Source: Mizuhopecten yessoensis (lineage: Eukaryota). From it: a DNA stretch of 64,000 nt. A program made the position numbers and the translations under genes. Each line of letters begins with the position of its first letter. Position 1 is the first letter of the stretch. The notes beneath the pieces are model-generated. The model was not told the origin of the DNA and did not search any database. It saw only the letters and a program-made list of their open reading frames with translations. The DNA lies in the NCBI RefSeq assembly GCF_002113885.1, contig NW_018405822.1, positions 87,176-151,175 on the forward strand. The letters run 5' to 3'. This document shows, in pieces, positions 15,801 through 54,935 of this stretch.

Positions 15801-18800
15801 GTTGGTTTGTTTGTTCCCAGGCTGGAACAGAACTGTTCTCTGAGGGGTAGATGATAGTGCTCCAGGATGAGATGACACAGACAGACCGCCCCTGGGGCTG
15901 GGATGGCGCGATGTGGAGAGCAGCTGCTGTATGACGGGATGGGATGCCTGCTTGGAGGAGAGAGTATGTTGTGACAGGCCCTGCAACAGTCTGGCATGTG
16001 ACATGCTCTGAGAGTGCTGCTGTAACTGGGCTGGCCTCTGTAGTAGTGACAAGGCCTGGGGTGGAAACATCTTGTCCCCTGATACAAGTTTCACATTTGA
16101 AGGCAGGCCTGTCAGTAGGGTGTGATTCCCAGAACTCGTCTGCAACAGGATCTGACTAGCGGAACTATCGTCAACAGGACCAATAGAGGGTAGCGTCTTC
16201 CCAGGACGCTGCAGGATGTTTGGCACATGTGGTACAGTTGTTGGCAAAGAAACATTGACTAGCTTGCGTTTCTTGGGCGTTCCAGGATCTTCGGAGTTGT
16301 TTGGAATGACACGTCTTTTCCGAATACGTCCCCTAGAGCTCACATCAATGTCATCACAGTCGTCCATGATTTCTGTAAGAATCAAGTCAGCACATAGAAT
16401 CAAGTCAGCACATAGAATCAAAGAAATCCTATTTTCCATCCTAAAAGGGTTTTTTGTATGCTGAACAATTGTAACTTTTTATCTAAGTTAGGACAACGCT
16501 GTCATCAATCTACCCCACTCTGAAGACAAGTTAGAACAATCTAAGTACATATGTAGCAACTTAAGGTACGACAATATGGACAAAACAATCCTTCTTCTTC
16601 AGTAAACAGGTTTAAACCATGAAGCCTTGGAGCATACAATGTTGATAAAATTCTGTTAGTATTATCCACAAACCATTTATAGTTACCCAGATACGGACAT
16701 AGCAATTATTCTTTATATGAGAAAGTATAAGGAAGTGACTGAAGTAAACATGAAGATCAAATTCATCATTTGGAACATGAGTTCACAAGAGCAACCCTAG
16801 CTGTAATTGTTATTCATGTAGCACATAAGTTACCAAAACAGCGAAAGAGCTTTATTTTCTTTTTTTGCTTAAGTGCACAGACTCACTTTTTCCTTTATCA
16901 ACTGATCATGAGTGGGGGACAAATAGCTCTTAACAAATGAAATTATTCTGACTATAGAGGTTTTAGTGACTCTAGTATATAGTAGTCAGATTTGAATCAT
17001 TTCGTTAAACATATTTCAAATTTAGTGCATTTATAAATGAACTTGTGCATCCCTACCAGTCTGAGTTGTGGAGATATTGTTTGTTAATGCAGCTGCAGAA
17101 GTTGTCGTTTGTTGGCTGACCACATCGCTCTCTTCATCCTTATCCTCATTCTCACTCCCATCCGAGTCAGAATTCTCGCCATCCTCAGACTCGGATGAGT
17201 CAGAGTGCTCAGATTCCCACTTTTCCTGAATTTCCCAAAAACAGCACTTAGTCTCAGCCATAATGATTTAACACAGTAACATTTGACTTATAACAGACGC
17301 ATTTGGGTCTCAATTTGGTAGAAATCTGTCCTGTAGTTTAGGAGATGACTTTAAATCAAAATCGGACACTTTGACCCAGTCCCTCATGATCAATCCCCAA
17401 AGTAGGTCAACCTCTTTATATAATTTATGATCCCCATGGCCTAAGGAATCAAGCACGAAAATGTTTTTGTAGAGGATTTTTTTTTACACAATGACAGTTA
17501 TCTCTTTTTCACATATTTCAAAAATGATGTAAATAAATTGAAAATATGATCTAGAAATTGTCAATTTATTATTCTTTGATGGAAACCAAATTACTCTCAA
17601 CCATGCATACTTATGACATCTGTTAGCATTGTATACATATGTAACCAGAGGCTATCATGTGCACCCACACATGCATTGTCACAGGGATCTCAATATTTTA
17701 CCAAACACTATTCAGTGCTCCAGATAACTTTTGAACATGTGGGGGTTTTCACCCCTACCTCTCCAAAGTGTTGGGGTGAAAACTTAAATTTTAAACAATG
17801 AAGTGCTGTAAAAGCAACGTTACCTGAAAATGTTGAAATAAGATGAATAATTTGTATGTGTTATTCTTATAGTATACGGTTAAGAATGACTCAAATTCAT
17901 ATTTTTGTGTTGTCTTGACATGTGGTATTATTTTTCCATTTCACTGTGATTGTGTTTAAATGTTTAAACCCAAAACTCAATGAGTTGCATATTTTTTTCG
18001 TTTGAATAGTACACATATCCTTCTTCGTTTTTTATCATTCCATATTCGAACAGCCCTTCTTGGCTCAAAGTCAGTTCAGGTCCTAACATGTTGATTTTCA
18101 TCAATGTATTGACAGTTGCTGCTTTGAGAGAGCATCTTAACCGTGACTTTAGGCGGTTTTGCACACTGAATGATCGTTCACATTCTATTGATGTTATACA
18201 CAAGGTTAATGCAATTTGTGCTAAAACAGAAAAGTTTGGAATCATTTTTGAATGAAGTAAAACTACCCGCCGATTGTTGACATTTTGATAGCGCCATAAT
18301 TTAATTCTCTCTCGTGTTAGCGTTTGTAACAGGAGGCATTGATATGCAAGCGTCTCGGTGACTCACTGTAAGCGTATTATAATATGCTAAATTGGACCCG
18401 GAGACTGACGCAATGTTCCGGATTTTGCTTGCGTGAATTAAGCAAGTTCATTTTTTTCTTTTGCGTAATTTGTGAAATATCGTACGTGAATACGCATTCA
18501 CGCAAGCTATCTGGAGCACTGNNNNNNNNNNNNNNNNNNNNNNNNNNNNNNNNNNNNNNNNNNNNNNNNNNNNNNNNNNNNNNNNNNNNNNNNNNNNNNN
18601 NNNNNNNNNNNNNNNNNNNNNNNNNNNNNNNNNNNNNNNNNNNNNNNNNNNNNTGTTGTAAGATAGCTCGTCTGTTGGTGATATGTGTTGTAAGATAGCT
18701 CGTCTGTTGGTGATATGTGTTGTAAGATAGCTCGCCTGTTGGTGATATATGTTGTAAAATAGCTCGTCTGTTGGTGATATATGTTGTAAGATAGCAAATA

Positions 18801-21800
18801 TCAATAGAAACACATGTACAGTAAAATCTTGATGTAATGGCTTATGCATGCCCTTCATTTCATTTGCCACCTCGCTTACTCCAAACATATTTTCAGGTTC
18901 CTTAATTATGTTTTTTTAAGAATTCCTTTGCATGTTTCCCACAATTTATTGCAAAAAATTCTTTGAACAAATGGAGGTTTTGCTGTACCTTAACATGTTG
19001 TACACTTCAAAAGAGATGATGAGGCAATGTGAAATAGTCAACAGCTGTTGATGGTGGTGACCGATCCAACACTGCACAATCATGCAAACTTGCCCAACAA
19101 CTTTAACTAAGTTATCTAAAATGAATGCTATAAAATGAATGCTATAATGTTGGATGGGAAAGCAGTTGTTGGTCGTCAGGAGTAGTTCAGATTAAAATGT
19201 GTAATAGTCGGATCTGTGGAGACATTGATTTACTTATGAGCACATATCACTTTTTCCACAATCCTACTTAAATAGGCACACCATTTAAAACCTATAGAGC
19301 AAAAAGATTTAACACTGTGATAATATGAGGGAGTGTACCTCAACTTGTTCCTCGAAATAAGTAGTCTGTTCCTTGTGCATCTTGAGCCTGGCTTTCCTCG
19401 TTGCCTGGGTGAGTTTCTGTTCCCATGGCTCCAGCTCCTTCAGCAGGAACAAGAGCCGCCCATGGAGGTCTATCACACAACGTTTGCGGGGCGGGGGTTT
19501 AATCACCTGATCAAATCATAAAAAAGCAAAAATTCAATAAGAATTTTCTGTAACATCAAGGACTGAAACATTTAGCTGATATGCTTCGAACAAAAATTGA
19601 ATGACATTAGTTGTTTTAGATAATAATTATAACCAGCAAGGATTTTCATGCATTTTAGCAGTGCCAAGTGCATGGAATGATATGATAAAGACATTCAATA
19701 CATTCTGTACAAAGAAGGTCAAGGTCATTTTCATTCTCACACTGTGTCGGGCTCTATCCCAGGAAGCCACCAGCCAAATATAAAGATTCTATACCTTCAG
19801 TTCTTCAGAAGAAGTCGTTTGAAGCATTTGACATATTTGACCCCTGTGACCTTGAAAGTAGGTCAAACTAATTTTCGTTCTCAAACTTTGTCAAAAAGCT
19901 TTCAGCCAAATATCATGACTCTAGGCCTGTCCGTTCTTCAGAGGAATTTGTTTAAAGGAAATGTTGACGGACGAGGACGTACAAGGGATGCCGCACCATG
20001 ACATAAGCACATTTGCCCTTTGGGTAGGTGAGCTAATAAAAATGTAGTGTTTTTAATTATAGGCTCCGTTTCGTGTTAGTTTTACCAAATCGCTAAGCCT
20101 TTAGTGTGCATGTTTTTTCCCGGCTCACTTTCATGTTGATCTCGCGTCTAACAAGTGATCGATAACCTCGTGAATTATTTCAATATTTTAAAATGAAGCA
20201 TCATAAAAATAGTGTATTCTACTTTTATTTTTTTCTCTTTGTGTAGATTTGAAGGGGATGTATTGAATGTCCACGCTTCTAGTATAAACTTATTTTTTAT
20301 AATCCCTTTACTGTCAAATCAGCCTGTAGTTCAAACAGTGCAGTAGGCCTTCACGCCACTTGTTGAGGAGTGAAAACAACATGGTCCCTCCATCGCGATT
20401 ATAAATAATTTCAATTAAATTGCTGTAGACCTATTGTTAATCGGTAATCACTGATAGAGTGTTAGCTAATTACTGCATTGTAATTTGTATTAACTGTGGT
20501 GTTGAGAAGTGTCAATAATTTTCGCTGAAGCTATCGATCCTTCCTAGCCTATTGTCCGGGATCAGACGGCGTCGGTGGTTATAATGTTACCTGTGCCAAG
20601 CTAGTGTTTGTCACCAAATCAGCAGTCATGACAACAGATTACCGATTTTAATCATTTTAGAGTAGGTAAAAATTATGTTGTTTTTGTTATCTTCAATCTA
20701 TCATATACTGAACAAAAAAAGAAACGCACAAAGTTCCCCCCCGGCAGTACACCTTAGCTGTAAGGTAATAATGGAATATTTGGTCAGGTATTACATCAAG
20801 AACGATCTCCCTTCTCAACAATCTACCCTAAAATCAGCCAAGCGTGACGATGTCAATGTGTGACTTTGTGAGCTTCTTTAGTCCAAATCACGCGGTGTGA
20901 TCAAGCCAAGCCAGAATTTTTCAAACAAATAATCTCAACGGATACTCTAAGTTCAGCCACATTAATTTTCCACGTTGGCATTTTGATTTTGCCATTGACC
21001 GAGATGCCACGCTTAACGCATATTCAGAGGGGTAGAGCAATTGCGATGCTGATGGATGGTCATAGCCAAACTGCTTTCACACGGCAGTTTGGTGTTGGCC
21101 CGTGTACAACTAACCGTCTGTACACGTTTCCGTGCTACTTGGTTAGTTACGATCGTCTCAGGAGCGGTGGTCGTCCACGTGTAACGACTGCACGACAAGA
21201 CAGGGCGATTCGATTGTCGCACTTGCGCAACAGATTCAAAACTGCTGCAGAGACTGCGACGACGGACAAAAGGCGATCGCAATAAGTCACTTGAGACTTT
21301 GTCTCAGGGGACCTAAAAAGGGTCCATTTACAAGTATGTTTTAATCTATGGAAAGTACTGAAAACATATCATTATCAAGTATCTCAACACGTTCCATATC
21401 TTACACATATTCTACATGTACACGTAGTGGTTTTGCCATACAGTTTATTGTGTGTGATGCCTAATTTGACTTACGAAGTGTTAGTGTATAGAGACAGTGA
21501 AAGTGGGAAAGAGAGTATACATGAATATATATATATGCATGGTCTAGAAAAAAGTGGCCGAAGACATTGAGTTGTAATAAAAGAAATCATAAACATTTCT
21601 CTTTTTTTATACTAGTAAATGTATATATATATATACACTTTATGAAAACATTTGAAAAGGGATATTCGGCTCATGAATATTCCTTTTTACAGAAAGGTTT
21701 GGTTGGAGGAAGGTGTTTAGCTCTGTACCATTTGTACCGGTCACATTCCTGTAATAGATATTTCCTGGTGTCTATAAATAATGCTGAGATGCTAACAAAT

Positions 21801-24800
21801 ATTTCTTCATTTAAATTCTGGTTATTGGCGCATGTGTGCAATTAACTGATGATGATGAAGAATAATTACTGATTCAATACGTTTCAACACCGACTTAGAA
21901 ATCATATTACTTGGTTTCATAGTGCGGTAAGAAGTTTCACTTGCAGTTGCCCAACAGCCCCTCTCTGGGGGCCCCTTTGGGAACTTTGCATCTCGCCTGT
22001 GTTTACTGCCTCGTTTCAAAACCGTTAGGTGACATTATTGGTGCTATTTTTAACAGGGCTTTCCGGAACAATTCAAGTGGTCAAACTGGACATTTGGAAC
22101 GGACTATGAATATGGGGATAGCAAGGTAAAATAATAACAAGGTGCATACAACACATACATCCATAAAAAAAAGAATATGGTTCTTCACGTGATTTCCCTT
22201 TAAGAGTATAGTGAGAACAGCATTGTTGGAATATCATTATGATTTATTCATTCTCAGACATATATTCATTTATTTCTATGATGATATTTTGAAAGATTTA
22301 TGATGAACTTGAAGTATTTGTTAAAATTATCCATTTTCTTGAGTCAGACTATTTTATTTGTAGTTATTAAAAAGAATAATGATAAGAAAAAGAAAAGGAC
22401 AAGAAAATGAGCATTAATAATCTAATGTCAAGATTATTATATAATACTATTTATTTAAGATTAACTACATCAATTATTATTATCTTGTTTTGAGTTTTCT
22501 GTCTCAATGTGGTGTCACGCATGATAGATGGGTTACAACACGGAAATGGTTGGCAGCTCCTTGCTGCGATGGAAGGGTTAAAAAATAGATACCATAGCGC
22601 ATCAAAAAATAGATACCATAGCGCATCAAAAAAAAATACCATAGCGCATCAAAAAATAGATACCATAGTGCATCAAAAAATAGATACCATAGTGCATCAA
22701 AAAATAGATATCATAGCGCATCAAAAAAAAGATACCATAGTACATCAAAAAATAGATACCATAGCACATCAAAAAATAGATACCATAGCGCATCAAAAAA
22801 TAGATACCATAGCGCATCAAAAAATAGATACCATAGCGCATCAAAAAATAGATACCATAGCGCATCAAAAAATAGATACCATAGCGCATCAAAAAATAGA
22901 TACCATAGCGCATCAAAAAATAGATACCATAGCGCATCAAAAAATAGATACCATAGCGCATCAAAAAATAGATACCATAGCGCATCAAAAAATAGATACC
23001 ATAGCGCATCAAAAAATAGATACCATAGCGCATCAAAAAATAGATACCATAGCGCATCAAAAAATTCCTGGGGAAAACAATGCCTCTGGTGCACTCTTGA
23101 GTTATAATGTTTTGAAATGTAACGAGAAGATTTTTCACCTTTTGTTTCTTTCCTTTACCAATAACAATTGGTTCCTGTTCAGCAAATGATTCCACCAGCT
23201 GCTTCAAGTCTTCCACACATTCCACGACCAGTTTAAATGGACCTATTTCTGGGAACTGAAAACCATCAATAGTTCAAATCATGTATGAAATTCAAACAAA
23301 TCATTTTTCTCCAAGAAGGAACACTGTTCATGTTGATCATGAACAAAAATATGTTCATATTAAAAAACAAGATGTGTACCATACACATTCACTATTATTT
23401 TTTCTGTTGTTACAACCAATCCTTGCCTAAAACCATACTTATAAATAAAGTACCATGAGTTCTTATGTTTATCAAAATGCAGAATAGCTAAATTATTCTA
23501 TCCATTCTATTTTGTAACATTGAACCATATTCCAGCCTAATTAGATAGCACTATACAGATATATTGAATTCACTTTAAAAACTTTTATGGCAGATTATAA
23601 GATATATCGTTCAGTCAAATTAGATCGCTTGCACAAAACTATCAACTTGCATATGAAGAAATGAAACCAACACTCTGAATGCAAAGGTTTTGAGAAAAGG
23701 AAAAAGTGAATAGGTATGTTTAAACTCGTAGTTTTAGCCCCAAAATGATTTTATATGGTTGGTTTACCGCCAAAACGCAAGAAAATCAGCCAAGAAAACA
23801 TTTTTAAATTTAAGGGTGTAGTGGCTTTTGCTTCAGTTTATACAGATACCTGCATTTGATTCAAATATATTTAGCATTATTTATTTATTCAGTTAATTCA
23901 GATTTTGACCAGGTATGCCACATAGGTACTCCTAGCCCGAGTTTCCTCTGGCCCTGACAGATGTCTGGTGTGGGGCCAGAGCACACTGCTATATATATAA
24001 AAACGTGCAATTCTCCGACACGGTCTACTATGACAGAACACATAATTCACATATAACAACAAATGGATTATTTATTGATCCAAATCAGCTCTTATAATCA
24101 CCAACAGCTGCTAAATTCTGTCAGTAGAGTCTTCGATTTTCAATCGTTCAAAATTTCCCACCTGAGCGAACACCAATTTTTGTACGTCACAAGATGACTA
24201 ATCAACAAACCATATTGATGAGGACTGAAAACAGAATATATCATTCTTGTTTTAGAAGATTTCCGGACCGCGTGATTTGGTTGATTAGTCATTTCTGATA
24301 CCAAACTGTGTTGAGAATTCCACGTTTTCATATAAAAGTGCGCTCTGGCCCCACACCAGACATCTACAATGTATCTGTCAAAATGTCTAAGTCTGGTGTA
24401 GGGGCCAGAGGAAACTCAGGCTAAGGTACTCCCTGTAATCAAGAAGTATTTACCATTTCCTCCAGCTGCTCAATCTCTTCCTCCTCCCTTTTGCAGTCCA
24501 TTGCTTCACCCTTTACCCTGTCTAAATCAGCATGACAGCTCTGGCCATAATCATGGTCTAGGAACTTCCCCACCCCACTCTGCCCAGAGTAGTCATGGTC
24601 ATGCATTTGCCCTAATCCCTGTTCAGGATCTTTCTCTGTCATTTCTACTTTCACTTTAATATCAGAAGTGTCAGATATATCACAGCTCGAGGTTTCACTA
24701 CTGTCTCTATCAGATTGTGTGAGGTTTTTCCCAGTTTTTACACCCCCCACCTCATGCTTCACATTTGCCACAGTTTCAGGTGGATTGGATGTTGGAGTAT

Positions 24801-27800
24801 TTGATTCAGGTTTTATGTCAAAGGATGTGTTACACTCAGAAAGCTTATGTTCCAAACTGTCCTGAATGTTGTCCCTATTTGTGGACTGTTCTGCCATAAT
24901 TAGACTGTTCTGGGGAACTTTAAGGAACTGACTAGTACCAATGCCATCAGATGGCGACTCTGTATTATGAGCAGAAAGGGTATCACAAAATAGAGACGGT
25001 TTTACATCTGTAGTTTCTATATCCTTTGGATGGTCTCCCTTGGCATCCATCTCTATAAAACCATCCTGGAATTCTGTTTCATTAACATCCATTGGTTCAT
25101 AACCACTGTTGTCATTTCCCTTCATGCTCACCGGATGCAACATTTGGGAATCTGTGTCACTTTCACACATTTCTGTCTCATTCCTGTCCTGTATATGTTT
25201 ACCATCTGTTTTGATATCGCTATTTTTACAAGCACCATTACTATCTTCTAAACTGTCTAGAGTGTTACTCGTCTCTGACATAGTCTCATCTCTATCCATG
25301 GAACTTTCGTCTAATGACTGTTCTGAAACATTGAGCTCTCGTAACAACCCATTCCGCACCAGCCTGCGAGTTCGAGACCGCTTACAAGCACCCTCTCCAT
25401 CTACAGATGAAGTGTCGCTACAGTTGTCACTCTCCATCAGTCGCTGTAGGGGTTTGTTTGGAGGCTCACTGTTCCGTTTTTTGGGCGTACCATCACATAT
25501 CCCACTGTCATTAAGATTTAAGTCACTCTGATCTCCAAAACTAGTCCTTGTATTAGCATCAGACCCATCGCTTTCATCACAACCATCCTCCTCGTCATCA
25601 GAAGATGAGGGTGAAGATGAATAATTTCGAACAGGTAACACAGTTTTGATTTTCTGAAAATATAAAACCAGAAAAAAAATAAAAATTAAATGCAATTGAT
25701 TATAAGTACGAAAAAATGCATTTCCCTATAATTTTTGCTATTTCTTTTGCATAAATGAAAACATTTCAACAAAATTATGAAACAGTTTCTATCAAATGTC
25801 TTTGATGATGCGATATTCTGTATTTATGGATGACTGTCTAACTGGAAAAAGTAAAATAGGTCCAGTAATTCTAAATGGACATGGTTTACCTGTCGAAGTC
25901 GGCTTGGCCTATTTGTAGGAGGAGCAGGTACTTCTGGCTTAAGCTTCTTTCTCTTTTTCTTTGCTTTCTTTGAGCTCTGTGCTTTATTTGTTTCGGTATC
26001 TATCGCCATTCGTTCTGGTTCTTTTTCCTATAAAACAGGATGCCAACGTTTAAAACAAACCTCATCAACCTCTAATTTAATCATTGTGCTGTGGTGTTTC
26101 TACCAAAATCAGAAATTAGATTTGTTTTCAAACTCTGCTAACTTTTTACACATCTGAAACAATTGTCCCCTATACTGCAGACAAAGAAACCATTTGAATT
26201 CTCCCAAATGAAACTCATCTTACCAGCATCAATGTTACAACATATCAGAAGCCATGGCAGCCATATTGAACCTCGAAACTATTTTTTTTCTTATTTGGTG
26301 TAAAATATACCCATATATTATACACCTATAAAGTACAAATAAAACCAGCCCAGTATAGGACAAATTATAATTATAATCGTACCAGCAATAAGATGCCACA
26401 ACAGCCATCTTGAGTCCAAAAACTCAAAAACAGACCACAGTTGGAAAAACAGCTTCAACCCCTTTTCATCATAGCTGTCTGACCATGAGTACACCACGGC
26501 ATAACAGTGAGCAGCCTTCCCAACTATTTTGTTTATTTCTTTAGGTACCAATTGTCAGGGCCTACCTCTATATTGTTTCTACAAGAACCAAATACTGGGC
26601 CCAGAGTTTGATTCAAACTTTCAAAAATTTGTACATTCAATATTGTTCAGGTACTGTGTCTTTTAATGATCATTTAAATTCTGACAAATGAAGTTTTCAA
26701 ATGTAATTTCAATAACAATGAAAAGATCTAAATTTTAGTTAACACCTTGTTAAGGTCATGGTCAAACACCTGACCAACTGAGTCAAGACCATTAATCTAT
26801 TTTAAAAAAGCCTTAAGGAAGTATATTTTAAAAGGACCACCTGTTGGTAGTTTTTCTCAGCAAGGAAAAATATGATGCAATCAATTTTAAACAATGCAAA
26901 CCTTTTGTTTTGGTTTTGTTTTTTCTAGAACAGGGAGTTTGGGTTCAGGGATTTGTTCCTGTTTGTAGATCCTAAGGTCAGCCCCACAGAACTGGGGGAA
27001 GTGGAGGTAACGTGTTCCATCAGCGTCAACTCCCAGTAGGTAGTCGTGCTGCTCCTCGATGGCCTGTGACTCAATAGCGTCCCTAATGGATTCCTGGTGC
27101 TCCTACAGATTTAACATAGAAAGTAATGTTCTTCATATTCTTACTGGTCTTTTTCTTTCTTTTCAATTAAAACAAATACATGTGAATAGCTTATCATAGC
27201 TTGACAACACATACACTATACCAGTACTGGAGGACTATTCCACACGATGACATGTAAATACTTTTATTGTTTAGGATACAAAAATTTATCTTATAGATGT
27301 GAAACGACTCGAAATAATCATGCCAATTTAATTCAAATGGTGTGATTGTATTTATCAGATGGTCTATTTTATCAGTTTTAAAACTGCCCAGCGATCTCCA
27401 GTAATACAGTCACACATGATGACCATAATGCAGTAATTTGCTGTGTGATTTTGCTAAAGAATCTTGCTAAGTTAGTCAACATACATGAACTAGCATAGCT
27501 ATTTTTTAGTCCATTGAGTTGATCAGCTCTAGATCTTCCTGTAAGAATATTAGCTGTTTAATAAGACTCCTAAATTGAGTTGGGAAGCTGAAACAACCCA
27601 GACCATGTGATTTATTTGATTATTTGAATTCTTAAACTAATCATTGATCTTTCAGATCATAGGAAACTGAAATTGCAGAAAATAACTTATAAATAAATAT
27701 ATACAACAAAGTTACATGATATCGAACATTAAGTCATTGAAAGCTCTTTTATAACAAATAAAGATTCACAAAATGTATGCTGACCACAAACGACTATTAT

Positions 27801-30800
27801 GCTTCAATTGTACATTGACTGAAATTTAACAAAACAAGTGGGTTATGTGGGTTGCTATATTTATTTCTGGGATAGCCCTTACCAGGCAGTAGTCACACAA
27901 TGACTTGACAATCCAAACTCTTCGGTAGGGACAAAGGTCATGGAATTTACGTCGCTCCAACGGATTTCTCTTGCCTGCCAAGAAATTGTTATACTGTTAT
28001 TAACTTGGTCGCATCAGCTGCTTTGATATCACAGTAAAGCATGCTTAGTGCAGCCTTATTGTAAATGCTGACTTAAATTACAAAGACTTTAAGTCATAGT
28101 TGTCTTTTATGGTAAGGTTCTCTCTTATGACCATCAACTATAACAAATAATGCCAATATAGCAAACCTGGTTTTTTATCCTGTTACCTGGTTTTCTGTAT
28201 ATAACTATAATAAATATTCTGTACCGAGATGTACCTGTTTTGTGTCAGCATATTTTGTTTTAACTTTCTCAATGGTCAGACATGTTATTCACCTAACTGA
28301 CTGATTAGAGCTTTTGACGGACATAAAACTTCTCAATTTGAAGTTTGGGTAGAAATCAAATGAATTATGACACTCAAAGAAAAAGGTGTCTCTTCCGGAC
28401 TCGTATTGGTTACAATGAATATTTCTCCAAGATTGGTATACACATACTAGTTCATGCTCCAACTATAAGTATTATCCTGGTTCGTGTTGTATTTAATTTA
28501 TCTGATAAATGTAAGGATGTTGGTATGAGAGATATATTTTGTATTTTATGTACATCGTATACTATATATATAAATCTCTAATTCTCATCAATAGATTATT
28601 TTTCGGACAGCTCTACGAATACTGGCTCTTGAAAAATAAAGCATGCACTTTACAAGTTGACTTTGTGTAAAATAAGGAAGATATGATACCAGCAACAATG
28701 TCCTTCATTGTGTTTATAATGATTAGAAAAAGGCATGAAATGAACAGATCAACACAAATATCATTTAACACAGACAAGACATACTTAAACCAAAACTGAA
28801 CAAAATCAATACAATGTAAGGCTCACTTTAGTTGCCCACCACATAGACCAAGCCAAGCCTATCAGTACAACAATGATAAACCTACCATCTCATGGGCAAG
28901 TGTTGGTGGCTTCTAATAGTGTTATCACACTAGTTTTAGACCAAGCACGACCTATACTTACCAACTATATCAAAGAAATGGCCATCTATTCCTAGTTTAA
29001 CTGCAGTCTGTAAAGTAATAACCAATTATTTTATAGAAATCCTGTTTCCAACTACTTCACATTTTAGTCATACTCAAAAAGGCATTAATTTTGTAAATAA
29101 CCACAGCTATCCAGTAATATTATGGAAGAAAGGGTAACAGGTTTCAAAACGTTTCCTCTCAACTTTATATACCACAACTTTAATTTCATTAAATAAAATT
29201 ATATTATTTATAAGATTAAGATCATTCATTCAGTATCAAAATAAATCCACAATCTAAAACGTGTCCCAAAGTGCTATACTCGTAGATTTGTTATGCGACT
29301 CGTGGAATTTCTGGAGAAATGGTACAAAGCATGATATAGTATGACCCATAGTAAACAATACAGTGAACAGATTTAACTGAATTGTTGATTGACTGGTCAG
29401 TTTGAAATGATACAACACATGGATGCTTCTACTAAATCTACTATTCTGGACACTTCCATTTTTATCAATAAATTATTTTCTTTGTTAATCATTTTTCATA
29501 AAGTGTCTGAATTCAAGTATATAATAAATCACACCAGACCTTTTGTACATCCTCATGGCTGTCTACAAATATTTTGTACCACTGCCTCAGTCTAAGCCTC
29601 AATTTCTCATCCCAAATACTGTATGGCATCAAGGTCTTCTTGTCAATTCTGGTAACACAACATTTTCATGATTATTATTTTATTCAATAATAAACATTTT
29701 AATTATTTTTTTGTCTTAAATATATTTCTGAAATTAATTCGGCTAAAGACCATGCAGAACCTGACAATGAGACAATGGTTGGTACTTTCTTCTATTGCAC
29801 TATACTAGCCCAAGGCACAAAATCGTCCATGTGTTATTTTATTTTTTACAAAAATTATAATAAAATTTGAACATACTCAAAATAAAACACAAATACTTAA
29901 ATACTGTTCTGAATTAACAGTGAAGTTCACATTACAGATTAATATTTTAAACATTATTTTCCCTTAAAGGCCATTATTGATACTTACTTCATTCTCTGGA
30001 AGGGAGTACTAAGTAGAGCTGTCATGACTTTCTGCATGACTGCACTTTCTCGAGGCATGTAGAAGCACCGCTCCAACTCAAACTGGGGAATTTCTCCGAT
30101 ATTAAGAGCATCCTGACACAGGAACAAAAATTGACCAATTTGGGGCAGCTGCAATAAAATATTAAAAAAATCAACATTTACCAAATGTTATTAACTCATT
30201 CACCCCTGAATTCAAAGGTGGGAATAGTTCCTCAGGGTTCTCCCCAGATTTTTTTTAAGCCAATATGTTTAATTTCAAACGGATGTTCAAGACGGACATA
30301 GCACTGTAGCATGCTCAACGATACCATATCATATTTAGGGGGGAGAGGTCATAATGTAGATGTGGCACTTAATTTCTGTCTCTTTAAATAAGTACTTTTA
30401 TTTACCAAACTCTTGGTGAATTTAAAAAGAAAAAGACAACAAATAAAATATGTTCTCTCCTCTGTCGGTACTCAGGGTCAAATGAGATACATGCGTTAAC
30501 CTTTAAATTTCCATCCAAATCTTTCTTAGTTAAATGTCCATCAAAGCTTTATTTTGACACTCTTACAAACCTCCCACATGGCCCTCATATAGTCTCCTTT
30601 GCTATCCAAGATAGAAGTTTCCCAGTCCAAGATTTCCTGGAGCTGTGCCTCTTGAACAGCCTTCCGATCAGTTATCTGCTGTTTACGCTGTTCACGGTCA
30701 CGGCGCAGCTCTTCCTGTCTCAGCTGACTCAACAGGGCAGAGGAATCATGAGGAATTATTGTCCTAGTTCGCCTCCTTAAACCTGCAAAATAAATAAGTT

Positions 30801-33732
30801 CAGATCTTTTGAGCAACTATTAGTAGACTTTAGGTCTCAAGTTGAAATTTTCAAAATTCCTTAGACTCAAAAATCTATAAGCTGAATTCTTTGATAATGT
30901 TGATAAATTCCTTTCTGTATATTTCCATATTGGTGTTTCCAAATTTGAATTTCAAAATTTTTAATGATGCATTTATTGTGGACATACCTGAGAAAGAAAT
31001 GTCATCACCATTTTGACCTGAAGTTGCTGAAATGGATGTCTTTTCTCGTAACTCTCTGAAATGAGGATAAACAAAATTAACAACAAGGTAACTGATTTCT
31101 ACAAACAATCAATTTTGTCCAATGCCACAAATTCAGCTTTCTCAGGTCTAGTTTCTAGGGAAACCGTGTGTCTGTGTGTATTAGTGTAAAAAGTAGGGGT
31201 CAGTCAGCCATGAATGTTGTGGACAAATCCCTTCTTGTTTGGCAAGATATTTATACAAGAAATTGAAAGAAAGATTTTTTTCTATTAGCAATGTACATAT
31301 GTTTTCTAAAGCATAATAAATGATATATATATTTTTATTTATGTATTGTTATAATGTTAACATTATCATAACATAAACATTGATCAGCATAAAATGTTAA
31401 AACAGAATTATTCTTTACATATATATATATATAAATAAAACAAAACATGAAGACTAGTATATGTATTCGTGTTTTGTTTTTATATATTTACCGTCACATG
31501 GACATATAACACTATTTATCGCTATATTATATATAGACACCTTCCTTCTTTTTTTTGGGCTGAAAATGTTTATTCACCAACAAAATCAAAGGCTCTTTTA
31601 GTTTTCCTTTTCTGAAAATGCATGTATCCATATTAATACATCATCTTTATTCAAAAAGAAATAGTTGAAGCATAACTGTGGCTGTGCACTATGCATACAG
31701 TATTTAATTACAATGTCCTAACATCATGATGTAGTAAAAAATATAAAGATACCAGGTAATATAATTCCTAATTAACGACCATACTCCATTTTGAAATTGA
31801 AATTGAAACCCAAAGCATGTGTATTTCTCCCCCCACTACAATAACACTGTAATAAAAATAAAGTCATTTGAATTGTGTTAACCTAGAAAGAAGAGCCAGT
31901 TTTTGTTCCATCATGGTCTCCAGCTTCTGTCCTCTCTTGGAAACATAGTGGTCGGGCCCATTGTATCTGTAGCAGTTCTCCAGCATCAGACGGAAGTCCG
32001 ACACAAACTCAGTGATTGTTTCATATTCCCGATCTTCAAACTTATTTAATACTGAAACATATTCAATTTGGAAACAAAGATAAGAGAAAATGTCCATTAC
32101 AATATATGTTTGGGATCAAAATAATATGTTATAATATATGTAGCAGATAATTATAACATCAAAACCAGATAGTTAGGATGGCAGAGCAACAGTCTCAAGT
32201 TTACCAAGGGGGATTTGCATCCACCCTCCTCCCCCACTTTTGAAGCTTGACCATAATTAACTGTTAAATTTTCATTTTCCCACAATGACCAATAAGATCA
32301 AATTTAAAGTTGATCAGATGCATTGTGAAACTAAAGCTACCACAATTGATACACTACCTAAATTGGTACACGTCAGAAAATGGTTCGAATAGTACTTTAA
32401 ATTAAATTTGTGAATTTTCCTCTGATGGTACGTATAACAAATATATTTATAAGCATTTCCACCAAATAGTTTTGTTTTCAGCAACATTTTAACGTCAACA
32501 TGTTAGAAAACATGCATACATACAATTGTAGATCAGTTTGTATTTATAAAAGTGATATATTTTGTTGAAATTGGCACATCAACTAGTAAAAATTAAACAA
32601 GTTTCATAGCCTGTGATATGGTGTACTAATCATGGCCGAAAAAACAATGAAATCTCACTCTCTAAGTGTAGCTGTCTATTTTTAAAAGCAAATTACTTAC
32701 ATTCAAAACTTTTCCTGAAAATGAACCTAGAAGCTTTTCTGATAAACTGTCAACATCGTAGCCTGACAAGCTACACAACTCAATAACTACCAGTTTGGGA
32801 GAAGTGACAAATACCCATAGTTTGTACTATACCCGTCGGTGTCTATGGTATTATTTTTGACAATACTGCTATATGGTTTCAGGTTTCCAATAGTACTATT
32901 TTTTTCGGTGAAGGGACCAGCTAATCTTGATATGAAACACCAGTTGTAGCTGGGAGTCAGTACAGGGACATCATTATTTGTAAAACTATCAGTGCCATAT
33001 GACCATCTATTGAGATTGACGTTTATATTCATCCAGTATATTTTTGTGGTGAAAAGCATACAGGACATTTGGATGATATATAGCCAATTTTGAAAATACA
33101 AATAAACCATAAATGATGATTAGTGGTACAGCAATTCTTAGGTCAATAGCAAGTCGTTCATCACTTACTCCAGAATATTGCAATATTATCAAATTAATCA
33201 TGTTAAGCTAGTTAATCTAGATTTAGTTTAGTGCACCAATTTCTGGTAAAAACCAAGCAGTCATTAGTTTAACCCAAGTACAACCAGATATATATGATTT
33301 CGAATTTAACTTGTGGCGAAATGACATACTTTTTCCCAACCAGACTGGTCTCTTGATTCGTTCATAATAATCTGCTGTTTCAGGATGGCTAGAGTCGACG
33401 GCTTCCAAAAAGTGCCAGTTCACAGATTTGTTACCATCGGCCATAAGTTCTTTCAAAATTCTAAAGCCTTGTTGGAGTTCAGGACCGAGAGGATTTCGAG
33501 TGTCGACTCCTTCTCCCTTGATGTCAGTTTCAGGTGATCTTTCACCATAATCCTCTTCTTTAACAGGTACCGGCGAAGGTAACCCCAAATCAGCTGATGG
33601 GGTAATCTCTCCATCAACTTTTTCTGTCATGTTCCTGTCATCTGTTCTGGTTTCGTCCGTACTTGAATCACAGGATATGATCTTTGACAGAAGATTTCCG
33701 GAAAACTCCTCGCTATTCCCGAACTCTTCCAT
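7945..33732 (-). CDS. BRD10: Bromodomain-containing protein 10 (KIAA2026) orthologue, 16 coding exons, ~2926 aa
   Basis: Exons joined by hand: 33732-33330, 32051-31883, 31055-30988, 30782-30571, 30148-29988, 29648-29540, 29007-28962, 27974-27883, 27102-26902, 26027-25890, 25653-24454, 23255-23139, 19506-19339, 17225-17057, 16372-15767, 12866-7945. All introns are GT-AG, phases match and the total is 8781 nt (divisible by 3). N-terminal bromodomain (ELQQGFRILKE...FVSDFRLMLENCYRYNG) and the motif HFPQFCGADLRIYKQ match KIAA2026 as recalled. Confidence 0.9.
13570..15545. repeat. 51-bp satellite array with internal inverted block (BRD10 intron 15)
   Basis: Unit TGTCTGTAATCTAATCAGAACAGAAGGATGTACCAGTCACTAACAAATATA; reverse-oriented copies at ~14128-14564. 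Confidence 0.95.
15767..16372 (-). CDS. BRD10: BRD10 exon 15
   Basis: Acceptor ttacag; (E)IMDDCDDIDVSSRGRIRKRR...KLTTP; donor G|gtaaat. Confidence 0.85.
17057..17225 (-). CDS. BRD10: BRD10 exon 14 (acidic)
   Basis: Acceptor attcag; EKWESEHSDSSESEDGE...; donor G|gtaggg. Confidence 0.8.
17713..18521 (-). mobile_element. Internally deleted hAT transposon retaining the C-terminal dimerisation domain
   Basis: 18-bp TIRs CAGTGCTCCAGATA(A/G)CTT; ORF 18245-17964 PNFSVLAQIALTLCITSIECERSFSVQNRLKSRLRCSL is a typical hATC motif; right flank is an N gap so the TSD cannot be checked. Confidence 0.85.
18654..18795. repeat. 32-bp minisatellite (TGTTGTAAGATAGCTCGTCTGTTGGTGATATG), continues into a gap
   Basis: Four or more direct copies next to the N run. 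Confidence 0.9.
19339..19506 (-). CDS. BRD10: BRD10 exon 13
   Basis: Acceptor gatcag; VIKPPPRKRCVIDLHGRLLFLLKELEPWEQKL...EEQVE; donor gtacac. Confidence 0.82.
19745..20040 (-). mobile_element. Fragment of a Helentron-associated (HINE/DINE-like) non-autonomous element
   Basis: GACGGACGAGGACG microsatellite-like segment and terminal GGTGAGCTAA, the reverse complement of the TTAGCTCACC start seen at 51671. Confidence 0.5.
20706..21257 (+). mobile_element. Tc1/mariner transposon left end with N-terminal transposase fragment
   Basis: TA followed by TACTGAACAAAAAAAGAAACGCA; from 21004 MPRLTHIQRGRAIAML...GRPRVTTARQDRAIRLSHLRNRF (paired-like HTH plus GRPR motif); truncated. Confidence 0.85.
22580..23065. 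repeat. 24-bp minisatellite (AAAAAATAGATACCATAGCGCATC)
   Basis: ~20 near-identical copies; gives rise to spurious repetitive ORFs on both strands. Confidence 0.95.
23139..23255 (-). CDS. BRD10: BRD10 exon 12 (WHIM3-like)
   Basis: Acceptor tttcag; FPEIGPFKLVVECVEDLKQLVESFAEQEPIVIGKGKKQK; donor gtgaaa. Confidence 0.85.
23933..24423. mobile_element. Non-autonomous TIR element, AcademH-like (TAG...CTA termini, 9-bp TSD)
   Basis: TIR TAGCCCGAGTTTCCTCTGGCCC / GGGCCAGAGGAAACTCAGGCTA; perfect TSD AGGTACTCC at 23924-23932 and 24424-24432. Confidence 0.8.
24454..25653 (-). CDS. BRD10: BRD10 exon 11 (1200-nt acidic/Ser-rich exon)
   Basis: Within the 418-aa ORF; acceptor tttcag|AAA, donor ATG|gtaaat; phase 0/0. 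Confidence 0.88.
25890..26027 (-). CDS. BRD10: BRD10 exon 10 (basic NLS-like KKAKKKRKK)
   Basis: Acceptor ttatag; EKEPERMAID...RPSRLRQ; donor gtaaac. Confidence 0.85.
26902..27102 (-). CDS. BRD10: BRD10 exon 9 (WHIM2-like)
   Basis: Acceptor ctgtag; EHQESIRDAIESQAIEEQHDYLLGVDADGTRYLHFPQFCGADLRIYKQ...; donor gtttgc. Confidence 0.9.
27883..27974 (-). CDS. BRD10: BRD10 exon 8 (WHIM1-like)
   Basis: Acceptor tggcag; KRNPLERRKFHDLCPYRRVWIVKSLCDYCL; donor gtaagg. Confidence 0.88.
28962..29007 (-). CDS. BRD10: BRD10 exon 7 (46-nt small exon)
   Basis: Acceptor ttacag; TAVKLGIDGHFFDIV(G); donor gtaagt; supplies the phase-1 junction exon 8 needs. Confidence 0.85.
29540..29648 (-). CDS. BRD10: BRD10 exon 6
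   Basis: Not in ORF track; read by hand: acceptor taccag; IDKKTLMPYSIWDEKLRLRLRQWYKIFVDSHEDVQK; donor gtctgg. Confidence 0.85.
29988..30148 (-). CDS. BRD10: BRD10 exon 5 (DDT-like segment)
   Basis: Acceptor ttgcag; LPQIGQFLFLCQDALNIGEIPQFELERCF...LLSTPFQRM; donor gtaagt. Confidence 0.9.
30571..30782 (-). CDS. BRD10: BRD10 exon 4
   Basis: Acceptor ttgcag; GLRRRTRTII...MRAMWE; donor gtttgt. Confidence 0.88.
30988..31055 (-). CDS. BRD10: BRD10 exon 3
   Basis: Acceptor tttcag; RELREKTSISATSG...; donor G|gtatgt; phases fit both neighbours. Confidence 0.85.
31883..32051 (-). CDS. BRD10: BRD10 exon 2 (second half of bromodomain)
   Basis: Acceptor tttcag; LNKFEDREYETITEFVSDFRLMLENCYRYNGPDHYVSKRG...KLALLS; donor AG|gttaac. 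Confidence 0.9.
33330..33732 (-). CDS. BRD10: BRD10 coding exon 1 (start codon; first half of bromodomain)
   Basis: ATG at 33732; ...ELQQGFRILKELM...DYYERIKRPVWLGK; donor A|gtatgt, phase 1. Confidence 0.88.
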
Positions 33733-53800: not shown

Positions 53801-54935
53801 GACAAGCTTCTTAATATACCGTCCTCCTAATGGACAGGCTTCCCAATATACCGTCCTCCTAATGGACAGGCTTCGCAATATACCGTCCTCCTAATGGACC
53901 GGCTTCCCAATATACTGTCCTCCTAATGGACAGGCTTCCCAATATACCTTCATCCTAATTGACTGGCTTCGCAATAGACCTTCCTTCTAATAGACAGGCT
54001 CCCCAATATACCGTCCTCCTAATGGACAGGCTTCGCAATATACCGTCCTCCTAATGGACAGCCTTCCCAATATACTGTCATCCTATTGGACAGTCTTCCC
54101 AATAGACCTTCCTCCTAATGGACAGGCTTCCCAATATACCGTCCTCCTAATGGACAGGCTCCCCAATATACTGTCATCCTAATGGACAGGCTTCCCAATA
54201 TACCATCCTCCTAATGGACAGGCTTCCCAATATACCATCCTCCTAATGGACAGGCTTCCCAATANNNNNNNNNNNNNNNNNNNNNNNNNNTCCTCCTAAT
54301 TGACAGGTTTCTCAATATACCGTCCTCCTAATGGACAGGCTTCCCAATATACTGTCATCCTAATGGACAGACTTCCCAATATACCATCCTCCTCATGGAC
54401 TGGCTTCCCAATATACCNNNNNNNNNNNNNNNNNNNNNNNNNGACAGGCTTTGCAATATACCGTCCTCCTAATGGACAGGCCTCCCAATATACTTTCATC
54501 CTAATGGACAGACTTCCCAATAGACCTTCCTACTAATTGACTGGCTTAACCATAGACCATCCTTCTAATGAACAGGCTTCCCAATAGACCTTCCTCCTAA
54601 TGGACAGGCTTCGCAATATACTGTCATCCTAATAGACAGGCTTCTCAATATACTGTCATCCTAATGGACAGGCTTCCCAATAGACCTTCCTCCTAATGGA
54701 CAGGCTTCGCAATATACCGTCCTCCTAATGGACAGCCTTCCCAATATACCGTCCTCCTAATAGACAGCCTCCCCAATATACTGTCATCCTAATGGACAGG
54801 CTTCGCAATATACTGTCATCCTAATGGACAGGCTTCCCAATATACCGTCCTCCTAATGGACAGGCTTCATCATAGACCATCCTTCTAATTGACAGGTTTT
54901 TCAATAGACCATCCTCCTAATGGACTGGTTTTCCA
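53800..54935. repeat. 32-bp minisatellite (AATGGACAGGCTTCCCAATATACCGTCCTCCT) with two small gaps
   Basis: More than 30 tandem copies. Confidence 0.95.

What the first reader, a model, noticed from the sequence alone, without database searches (positions are those of the whole stretch)
23139..30782. BRD10/KIAA2026 carries a CECR2/RSF1-like DDT-WHIM1-WHIM2-WHIM3 module: a candidate ISWI-complex accessory subunit
Seen: the reconstructed exons encode, in order, MWELPQIGQFLFLCQDALNIGEIPQFELERCF, NPLERRKFHDLCPYRRVWIVKSLCDY, LLGVDADGTRYLHF...RIYKQ and FKLVVECVEDLKQLVESF. Known: CECR2 and RSF1 have the same ordered motifs (WE.P.I..F DDT; NPL...F.DL....RV.IL..LCD WHIM1; LG.D..G..Y..F WHIM2; W.L.C...E....L.ESF WHIM3), which bind the ISWI HAND-SANT-SLIDE region. 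Inference: this poorly characterised protein could define another ISWI (SMARCA5/1) remodelling complex, with the bromodomain N-terminal to the module rather than C-terminal as in CECR2.
Basis: partly seen in the sequence, partly recalled or inferred. Interest (0 to 1): 0.7.

Follow-up and report, generated by a model that had tools for sequence, protein, structure and literature searches.

The report
BRD10 carries a hidden DDT-WHIM module
A mollusc copy of the poorly understood bromodomain gene BRD10/KIAA2026 encodes a conserved helical region whose predicted 3D shape matches only Ioc3, the yeast partner of the ISWI chromatin-remodelling motor, so BRD10 may be an overlooked ISWI partner, though binding is untested.

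Summary
The four peptide motifs lie on the minus strand in clean, phase-compatible exons of an intact BRD10/KIAA2026 orthologue. The whole gene spans 33732-7948, and the nearest protein comes from a scallop.

Sequence methods do not link the region to DDT/WHIM:
- HMMER places the exons and 53 orthologues only in Pfam PF23450 (KIAA2026_hel).
- Profile searches of PDB sequences and of short proteins in a 5.8-billion-protein set found nothing.

The module is longer than reported. It needs one more exon (19506-19339), and a roughly 450-residue disordered insert separates WHIM2 from WHIM3.

I put a divergent DDT-WHIM module at about 0.85 and ISWI binding, which is inferred only, at about 0.45. No held paper links BRD10 to DDT, WHIM or ISWI. 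Verdict: new member of a known kind.

The parts
33330..33732 (-). Exon 1: start codon at 33732, acidic N-terminus and first part of the bromodomain
   Evidence: tblastn of P0001 residues 1-141. ATG and GTATGT donor located. No Pfam hit for this exon alone.
31883..32051 (-). Exon 2: C-terminal half of the bromodomain
   Evidence: Pfam PF00439, E 1.7e-9, profile positions 44-81 of 84. tblastn at 91% identity to P0001.
30988..31055 (-). Exon 3: short linker exon
   Evidence: tblastn. Splice sites. Its 3' end equals the loose-end consensus of RNA reads that continue into exon 4.
30571..30782 (-). Exon 4: charged coiled-coil stretch that ends in MWE, the first residues of the DDT-like domain
   Evidence: Translation and splice sites. 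tblastn at 89% identity. RNA reads present.
29988..30148 (-). Exon 5: DDT-like helices (LPQIG...FELER...)
   Evidence: Pfam PF23450, E 3.8e-21, profile positions 2-53 of 142. 88 bits against the orthologue profile. It lies in the N-terminal part of the module that aligns to Ioc3 from about residue 175.
29540..29648 (-). Exon 6: long helix after the DDT-like domain (PYSIWDEKL...WY)
   Evidence: Pfam PF23450, E 2.7e-8, profile positions 57-88. Splice sites. Holds the invariant Y, W and L columns of the family.
28962..29007 (-). Exon 7: 15-residue connector (KLGIDGHFFDIV)
   Evidence: Splice sites and phase. Aligns to profile positions 110-123. RNA reads fall in this bin.
27883..27974 (-). Exon 8: WHIM1-like helix (NPLE..F.DL....RVW..K.LCD)
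   Evidence: Pfam PF23450, E 1.1e-9, profile positions 107-136. Nearly invariant P, F, H, L, V, W, K, C and D columns. Helix 138-155 in the model.
26902..27102 (-). Exon 9: WHIM2-like beta hairpin with the GxD signature (LLGVDADG...FPQFCGADLRIY)
   Evidence: 74 bits against the orthologue profile. G and D are at least 90% conserved. Strands 174-178, 184-187 and 198-201 in the model. No Pfam model covers it.
25890..26027 (-). Exon 10: lysine-rich stretch (putative nuclear localisation signal or DNA-binding patch), start of the disordered insert
   Evidence: Translation and corrected acceptor. pLDDT below 50 in the scallop model.
24454..25653 (-). Exon 11: 400-residue acidic, Ser-rich disordered insert between WHIM2 and WHIM3
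   Evidence: Open frame with splice sites. tblastn at 70% identity. No Pfam family. Disordered in the scallop model. Insert length varies from about 40 to about 580 residues among orthologues.
23139..23255 (-). Exon 12: WHIM3-like strand plus helix (FKLVVECVEDLKQLVESF)
   Evidence: tblastn at 95% identity. Conserved in about 60 orthologues. Strand 248-250 and helix 253-272 in the model.
19339..19506 (-).
   Evidence: tblastn at 89% identity. Invariant or nearly invariant L, E, P and W columns. Helix 280-327 in the fish model and 731-771 in the scallop model, with pLDDT above 90. The Ioc3 alignment runs to model residue 318 (fish) and 766 (scallop), so it extends into this helix.

Best explanation
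The region holds exons 4-12 of an intact, expressed BRD10/KIAA2026 orthologue in a bivalve mollusc genome. Together with exon 13, they encode a conserved domain of about 300 residues that is a highly divergent DDT-WHIM1-WHIM2-WHIM3 module, the same architecture as yeast Ioc3. A lineage-variable disordered insert splits it.

By analogy with the characterised DDT-WHIM proteins, the module most likely docks onto the C-terminal HAND-SANT-SLIDE region of the ISWI ATPase and lies along linker DNA. The N-terminal bromodomain would then direct the remodeller to acetylated chromatin.

Shown here: the gene model, the family assignment, the fold match to Ioc3 and the conserved GxD signature. Inferred: common ancestry with DDT-WHIM proteins (about 0.85) and ISWI binding (about 0.45). 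The stated confidence is for the combined statement.
For: - Gene model and expression.
- Family: PF23450 plus an N-terminal bromodomain in the window's exons and in orthologues. Orthologues are named KIAA2026/BRD10 in brachiopod, fish, frog, turtle and shark, and are also present in molluscs, nemerteans, arthropods, an echinoderm and a hemichordate.
- The hypothesis named this fold in advance, so a chance top rank is about 1 in 48,000.
- The GxD signature that defines WHIM2/WSD (PMC11789628) is at least 90% conserved.
- Published view: DDT plus WHIM motifs form the binding pocket for the ISWI SLIDE domain, and ISWI binding is postulated to be general for WHIM proteins (PMC8536118).
- Precedents: the Paramecium ICOP proteins have a WSD motif seen only by HHpred and do bind ISWI1. 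The same paper notes that Ioc3 is annotated with WHIM1 alone, so profile annotation misses divergent members.
Against: - No DDT (PF02791), WHIM1 (PF15612) or WSD (PF15613) hit at E<=10 for any exon. Only 1 of 53 orthologue modules touches WSD, at E 0.064.
- Orthologue profiles find no PDB chain by sequence, not even Ioc3.
- The same profile found no DDT-annotated protein among 1304 word-sharing candidates of 124-394 aa.
- Foldseek missed Ioc3 entirely; its best E was 1.9.
- The two models share most of their alignment rows, so they are not independent.
- No experimental or proteomic link between BRD10 and ISWI was found. From my own recollection, unchecked here, the ISWI interactome work I know of lists seven DDT-WHIM partners without KIAA2026.
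- The only functional paper places BRD10 at the ciliary base with DZIP1 and acetylated tubulin (PMC13705004).
Confidence: 0.5

Rival explanations
1. The module descends from DDT-WHIM but no longer binds ISWI. It serves as a different scaffold, for example a DNA- or nucleosome-binding platform or a cytoplasmic/ciliary adaptor working with DZIP1 and acetylated tubulin.
For: - PMC13705004 reports a BRD10-DZIP1 interaction, localisation near the basal body and binding to acetylated alpha-tubulin.
- No paper in the library links BRD10 with SMARCA5 or ISWI.
- Divergence is so great that no DDT or WHIM HMM detects the family, which is compatible with a changed interface.
Against: - The module is strongly conserved across Bilateria, including the motif positions and the GxD. 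That argues for a conserved ancient partner.
- By my reading of PMC13705004's coordinates, the DZIP1-binding site maps to an NLS-containing region that would lie in the variable insert, not in the module. This was not checked by alignment.
- Per PMC8536118 and PMC11789628, the WHIM proteins characterised so far are ISWI-complex subunits or bind ISWI.
Confidence: 0.33
2. PF23450 is an independent helical fold. Its resemblance to Ioc3 is a generic helical arrangement or convergence, and the four motifs resemble DDT/WHIM only superficially.
For: - No significant sequence or profile-sequence link.
- Foldseek found nothing.
- Pfam keeps PF23450 as its own family name.
Against: - It aligns about 250 residues colinearly, including the beta hairpins and the segments on both sides of a 450-residue insert.
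- It is exactly the fold predicted beforehand.
- The GxD signature sits in the hairpin.
- The module is associated with a bromodomain, as in other DDT-WHIM proteins.
Confidence: 0.15
3. The exons are a pseudogene or a chance arrangement of open frames.
For: None found. Only the low RNA depth of about 1x.
Against: - The reading frames are intact, with canonical splice sites and compatible phases over 13 exons.
- Per-exon identity to a full-length scallop protein is 63-95%.
- RNA reads are almost confined to the exon-holding bins.
Confidence: 0.01

Closest known systems
Ioc3 (S. cerevisiae ISW1a subunit; PDB 2Y9Y/2Y9Z chain B)
   Different: Sequence identity is 12-13%. About 340 of Ioc3's 595 observed residues are left unaligned to BRD10. 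Ioc3 has GIQ instead of GxD and is not described with a bromodomain in the papers read here. BRD10 has an N-terminal bromodomain and a long disordered insert between WHIM2 and WHIM3.
CECR2 (CERF complex) and RSF1 (RSF complex)
   Same: CECR2 also pairs the module with a bromodomain.
   Different: As I recall it, CECR2 has the bromodomain C-terminal to the module, whereas BRD10 has it N-terminal. CECR2 and RSF1 are established SMARCA5/SMARCA1 partners; BRD10 is not. No CECR2 or RSF1 sequence could be fetched for a direct comparison.
BAZ1A/ACF1, BAZ1B/WSTF, BAZ2A, BAZ2B, BPTF
   Same: DDT plus WHIM1-3 form an ISWI SLIDE-binding pocket and a proposed 'protein ruler' (PMC8536118). They combine the module with bromodomains.
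   Different: PMC8536118 describes WAC and PHD domains and a C-terminal bromodomain in BAZ1B. BRD10 orthologues show only a bromodomain plus PF23450 in Pfam.
Paramecium ICOPa/ICOPb
   Same: They are a precedent for a highly divergent WSD-motif protein that routine searches miss (HHpred 91.7%, E 0.35) and that nevertheless binds ISWI1 directly (PMC11789628).
   Different: ICOPs have only a WSD-like motif and low-confidence structure predictions. BRD10 has the whole module with a confident fold.
Pfam PF23450 (KIAA2026 helical domain)
   Same: The window's exons 5, 6 and 8 and all orthologues match it far above its cutoff.
   Different: The 142-position model covers only the DDT-like and WHIM1-like part. 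The conserved WHIM2-like hairpin, the WHIM3-like element and the final long helix are not covered.

Membership tests
BRD10/KIAA2026 family | Match to PF23450 (KIAA2026_hel) above the gathering score | tested here: met
   Exon 5 scores 76.3 bits, exon 8 39.2 bits and exon 6 34.7 bits, against a cutoff of 27.8. P0001 scores 192.6 bits.
BRD10/KIAA2026 family | Bromodomain N-terminal to the helical domain | tested here: met
   Exon 2 matches PF00439 at E 1.7e-9. In P0001 the bromodomain is at 91-171 and PF23450 at 283-425.
BRD10/KIAA2026 family | Closest relatives are proteins named KIAA2026/BRD10 | tested here: met
   Hits include proteins named KIAA2026 or BRD10 in Lingula, Xenopus, Callorhinchus, Pelodiscus and many fishes. 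The nearest is a Ylistrum balloti protein labelled mucin-2-like.
DDT-WHIM module proteins (ISWI accessory subunits) | Significant sequence-profile match to DDT (PF02791), WHIM1 (PF15612) or WSD (PF15613) | tested here: not met
   No hit at E<=10 for any exon. Of 53 orthologue modules, one hits WSD at E 0.064 and none hits DDT or WHIM1. HMMER's speed filters may hide very weak matches.
DDT-WHIM module proteins (ISWI accessory subunits) | Profile-profile (HHpred-type) match to DDT/WHIM profiles or to Ioc3 | not tested
   No DDT-family sequence or profile could be obtained.
DDT-WHIM module proteins (ISWI accessory subunits) | Whole-module fold superposes colinearly on a solved DDT-WHIM protein | tested here: met
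   [not shown]
DDT-WHIM module proteins (ISWI accessory subunits) | GxD signature in WHIM2/WSD | tested here: met
   The G and D columns are at least 90% conserved in 53-62 orthologues. The window has G-V-D in exon 9. The signature is defined in PMC11789628.
DDT-WHIM module proteins (ISWI accessory subunits) | About 60-residue three-helix DDT domain at the start of the module | tested here: inconclusive
   The model has helices 18-28, 40-46 and 54-64/67-75, which fits the description in PMC8536118. There is no DDT HMM match, and no residue-level structural alignment was available.
DDT-WHIM module proteins (ISWI accessory subunits) | Physical binding to the ISWI HAND-SANT-SLIDE region | not testable with these tools
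   No multimer prediction was available and no ISWI sequence was in hand. Literature and supplement look-ups were empty.

The most novel reading that the evidence does not exclude
BRD10 is the founding member of an eighth, bilaterian-wide family of DDT-WHIM ISWI accessory subunits. It would define a previously unlisted ISWI complex in animals, humans included, in which an N-terminal bromodomain targets the remodeller.
Probability: 0.4. Interest if true: 0.8.

Novelty: new member of a known kind. Interest (0 to 1): 0.65.

Why it matters
As I recall it, and unchecked here, the set of animal ISWI complexes has been treated as closed at seven DDT-WHIM partners: BAZ1A, BAZ1B, BAZ2A, BAZ2B, BPTF, CECR2 and RSF1. 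BRD10 is a large protein conserved from molluscs and arthropods to vertebrates. It was named only in 2025, from a bromodomain match (PMC12807706), and a 2026 paper still calls it uncharacterised (PMC13705004).

Recognising its conserved core as a DDT-WHIM module gives it a concrete hypothesis that a single co-IP could test. If that test is positive, it adds a new remodelling complex. It would also give a chromatin-based frame for the 9p-deletion and disease-association papers that list the gene.

The case also shows that Pfam PF23450 under-covers the domain and is probably related to DDT/WHIM.

Tried and rejected
Steps that led nowhere:
1. HMMER against Pfam, exon by exon and for 53 orthologue modules, gave no DDT or WHIM hit.
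2. hmmsearch of two orthologue profiles against PDB sequences at E<=10 gave only spurious hits.
3. Foldseek against the PDB gave nothing. A VIA re-look at Foldseek's own list also gave nothing.
4. Two homologous-protein searches were meant to pull in DDT-family proteins for an hhalign test.
   - The region search returned only the top 120 of 494 hits, all fish BRD10.
   - The profile search of 124-394-aa proteins returned 12 BRD10 fragments and no DDT-annotated protein.
   - The third search was not spent, because BRD10 orthologues would again fill the list.
5. The sandbox holds no Pfam or HH databases.
6. The odd low-ranking hits of the representative search (P0096, P0030 and others) were checked with Pfam. 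They are BRD10 fragments or noise, not DDT paralogues.
7. The original WHIM paper (PMC3272235) is not held.
8. Supplement look-ups in four SMARCA5/ISWI papers failed because no files are held.
9. The search of earlier findings had no related note.
10. RNA depth was too low for the tool to call junctions.

Step left out by rule: the spliced protein of the window was never joined. Exons were searched one by one by reference, and database orthologues were used for alignment and folding.

Rejected readings: a pseudogene or chance ORFs, and a vertebrate origin. The nearest relatives are bivalve and other mollusc proteins.
Full report
**What is in the sequence**

I mapped the exons with splice signals and phase bookkeeping:

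| Exon | Coordinates | Content |
|---|---|---|
| E1 | 33732-33330 | start codon, N-terminus, start of bromodomain |
| E2 | 32051-31883 | bromodomain, C-terminal half |
| E3 | 31055-30988 | short linker |
| E4 | 30782-30571 | coiled coil, ends in MWE |
| E5 | 30148-29988 | begins LPQIG; DDT-like |
| E6 | 29648-29540 | long helix |
| E7 | 29007-28962 | connector |
| E8 | 27974-27883 | NPLE...LCDY; WHIM1-like |
| E9 | 27102-26902 | LLGVDADG...RIYKQ; WHIM2-like |
| E10 | 26027-25890 | lysine-rich |
| E11 | 25653-24454 | 400 acidic/Ser-rich residues |
| E12 | 23255-23139 | FKLVVECVEDLKQLVESF; WHIM3-like |
| E13 | 19506-19339 | long C-terminal helix |

All exons have AG/GT boundaries and compatible phases. 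Each exon was searched by reference, and database orthologues were used for everything that needs a contiguous protein.

**Which gene it is**

A phmmer scan of 1.84 billion representatives with E5 alone gave 103 hits at E<=1e-3. Most are proteins of 1100-2900 aa with the match near residue 270-340. The best hit, P0001 (2931 aa), aligns by tblastn along the window from 33732 to 7948 at 63-95% identity per exon, so the whole gene lies in the window.

P0001 is a protein of the scallop Ylistrum balloti, labelled 'mucin-2-like'. The next hits are from a pearl oyster, a limpet, a brachiopod ('uncharacterized protein KIAA2026') and a hemichordate. Further members come from octopus, snails, nemerteans, a scorpion, a tick, a sea spider, a prawn, insects, a crinoid, a shark, bichirs, teleosts, a frog and a turtle.

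The window is therefore from a bivalve mollusc, and the family is bilaterian-wide. Pfam on full-length members shows only a bromodomain followed by PF23450, 'KIAA2026 helical domain'.

**Expression**

Four RNA-seq runs under the same species label were laid on 26850-30830. They give only about 1x depth. The reads fall in the bins that hold E4, E5, E6, E7, E8 and E9, and the purely intronic bins are almost empty. The exception is a pile-up at about 30191-30230 that behaves like a short repeat.

A loose-end consensus at 30795 in run X24 is the exact reverse complement of E3 positions 31023-31001. These reads are therefore E3-E4 spliced reads that the aligner over-extended by 13 similar bases. 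No junction reached the tool's own reporting threshold.

**Sequence-level tests of the DDT/WHIM claim: negative**

- hmmscan against Pfam at E<=10 gave only PF23450 for E5, E6 and E8, and nothing for E9, E12 or E13.
- All 53 orthologue modules hit PF23450. None hit DDT or WHIM1, and one hit WSD at E 0.064.
- Profiles of the whole module and of its N-terminal 220 residues found no PDB chain by sequence.
- The same profile found no DDT-annotated protein among 1304 word-sharing candidates of 124-394 aa.

**Fold-level test: positive**

*Fish module.* AlphaFold2 on a fish orthologue module with a short insert (P0052:276-620, 53-row alignment) gave pLDDT 86.5 and pTM 0.85. In order, the model contains:
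- three or four short helices (18-75)
- a long helix (81-101)
- a helix (138-155) that follows the NPL motif
- a three-stranded sheet (174-201) carrying the G.D residues
- a strand plus helix (248-272)
- a 48-residue helix (280-327)

- The hit is the one fold named in advance.
- It stands 6 Z units clear of everything else.
- It is colinear over the whole module.
- It includes the beta elements.

I take this as strong evidence for a DDT-WHIM-type module.

**Motif-level consistency**

- W-E-x-P-x-I-G-x-F and E-L-E-R in the first helices
- Y...W...L...W-Y in the long helix
- P...F-H-x-L.....V-W..K.L-C-D
- L-G-x-D.....Y..F-P.F...D.R.Y
- L...L..L-L.E-L.P-W-E in the last helix

The G-x-D triplet is the signature that defines WHIM2/WSD (PMC11789628). 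That paper also records two useful precedents. Ioc3 is annotated with WHIM1 alone although it also has WHIM2 and WHIM3. The Paramecium ICOP proteins, whose WSD motif is visible only to HHpred, bind ISWI1 directly. PF23450 covers only the DDT-like plus WHIM1-like part, so the WHIM2-like, WHIM3-like and terminal-helix parts are unannotated.

**Mechanism**

[quoted passage not shown] ISWI binding is postulated to be general for WHIM proteins.

The most likely mechanism has three parts:
- The BRD10 module docks the ISWI HAND-SANT-SLIDE region.
- The bromodomain supplies acetyl-lysine targeting.
- The lysine-rich stretch after WHIM2 supplies nuclear import or DNA contact.

Only the architecture is shown here; the binding is inferred.

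Evidence against binding:
- No paper in the library mentions KIAA2026/BRD10 together with SMARCA5, WHIM or the DDT domain. The only co-mention with ISWI is incidental, in the HGNC nomenclature paper.
- From memory, unchecked here, ISWI interactome studies list seven partners without it.
- The single functional study places BRD10 near the ciliary base with DZIP1 (PMC13705004). By my reading of that paper's coordinates, its DZIP1-binding, NLS-containing region would lie in the variable insert rather than in the module; I did not check this by alignment.

My estimates are about 0.85 for DDT-WHIM ancestry and about 0.45 for ISWI binding.

**Novelty and verdict**

The gene and its Pfam family are known. 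The link to DDT/WHIM and ISWI appears undescribed in the literature I could search. HGNC renamed the gene in 2025 purely on a bromodomain match, and the 2026 paper lists only a bromodomain, a coiled coil, an 'FhaB-like' region and NLSs.

This is a new member of a known kind. It yields a directly testable hypothesis of real interest to chromatin biologists, but it rests on predicted structure and not yet on profile-profile statistics or biochemistry.

Noticed in passing
window 22580-23065: A 24-bp unit repeated 20.3 times (96% matches) sits in the intron just downstream of exon 12. It creates long spurious ORFs on both strands (the 226-aa and 199-aa ORFs), one of which runs on from the real exon.
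   Followed up: partly
window 30191-30230 (intron between exons 4 and 5): RNA-seq pile-up of up to about 18x against about 1x on the exons. The reads have 'opposite strands' joints at 30210/30230 and consistent loose ends on one side in all four runs. It looks like a short inverted-repeat piece of an abundant transcript or repeat from elsewhere in the genome.
   Followed up: no
P0001 (Ylistrum balloti XP_060068222.1) and P0010 (Octopus bimaculoides): Mollusc BRD10 orthologues are labelled 'mucin-2-like', 'mucin-4' or 'serine-rich adhesin for platelets-like' in public records. This is presumably because of the long low-complexity tail, although they carry a bromodomain plus PF23450.
   Followed up: partly
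orthologue modules, alignment A1/A3: The insert between the WHIM2-like hairpin and the WHIM3-like element ranges from about 40 residues (a planthopper, some fishes, a scorpion) to about 450-580 residues (molluscs). The structured parts stay conserved.
   Followed up: partly
[not shown]
   Followed up: no
window 18522-18653, 2402-2489, 54265-54290, 54418-54442: Runs of N. The one at 18522-18653 lies in the BRD10 intron after exon 13.
   Followed up: no
It is unrelated to this finding and was not examined.
   Followed up: no
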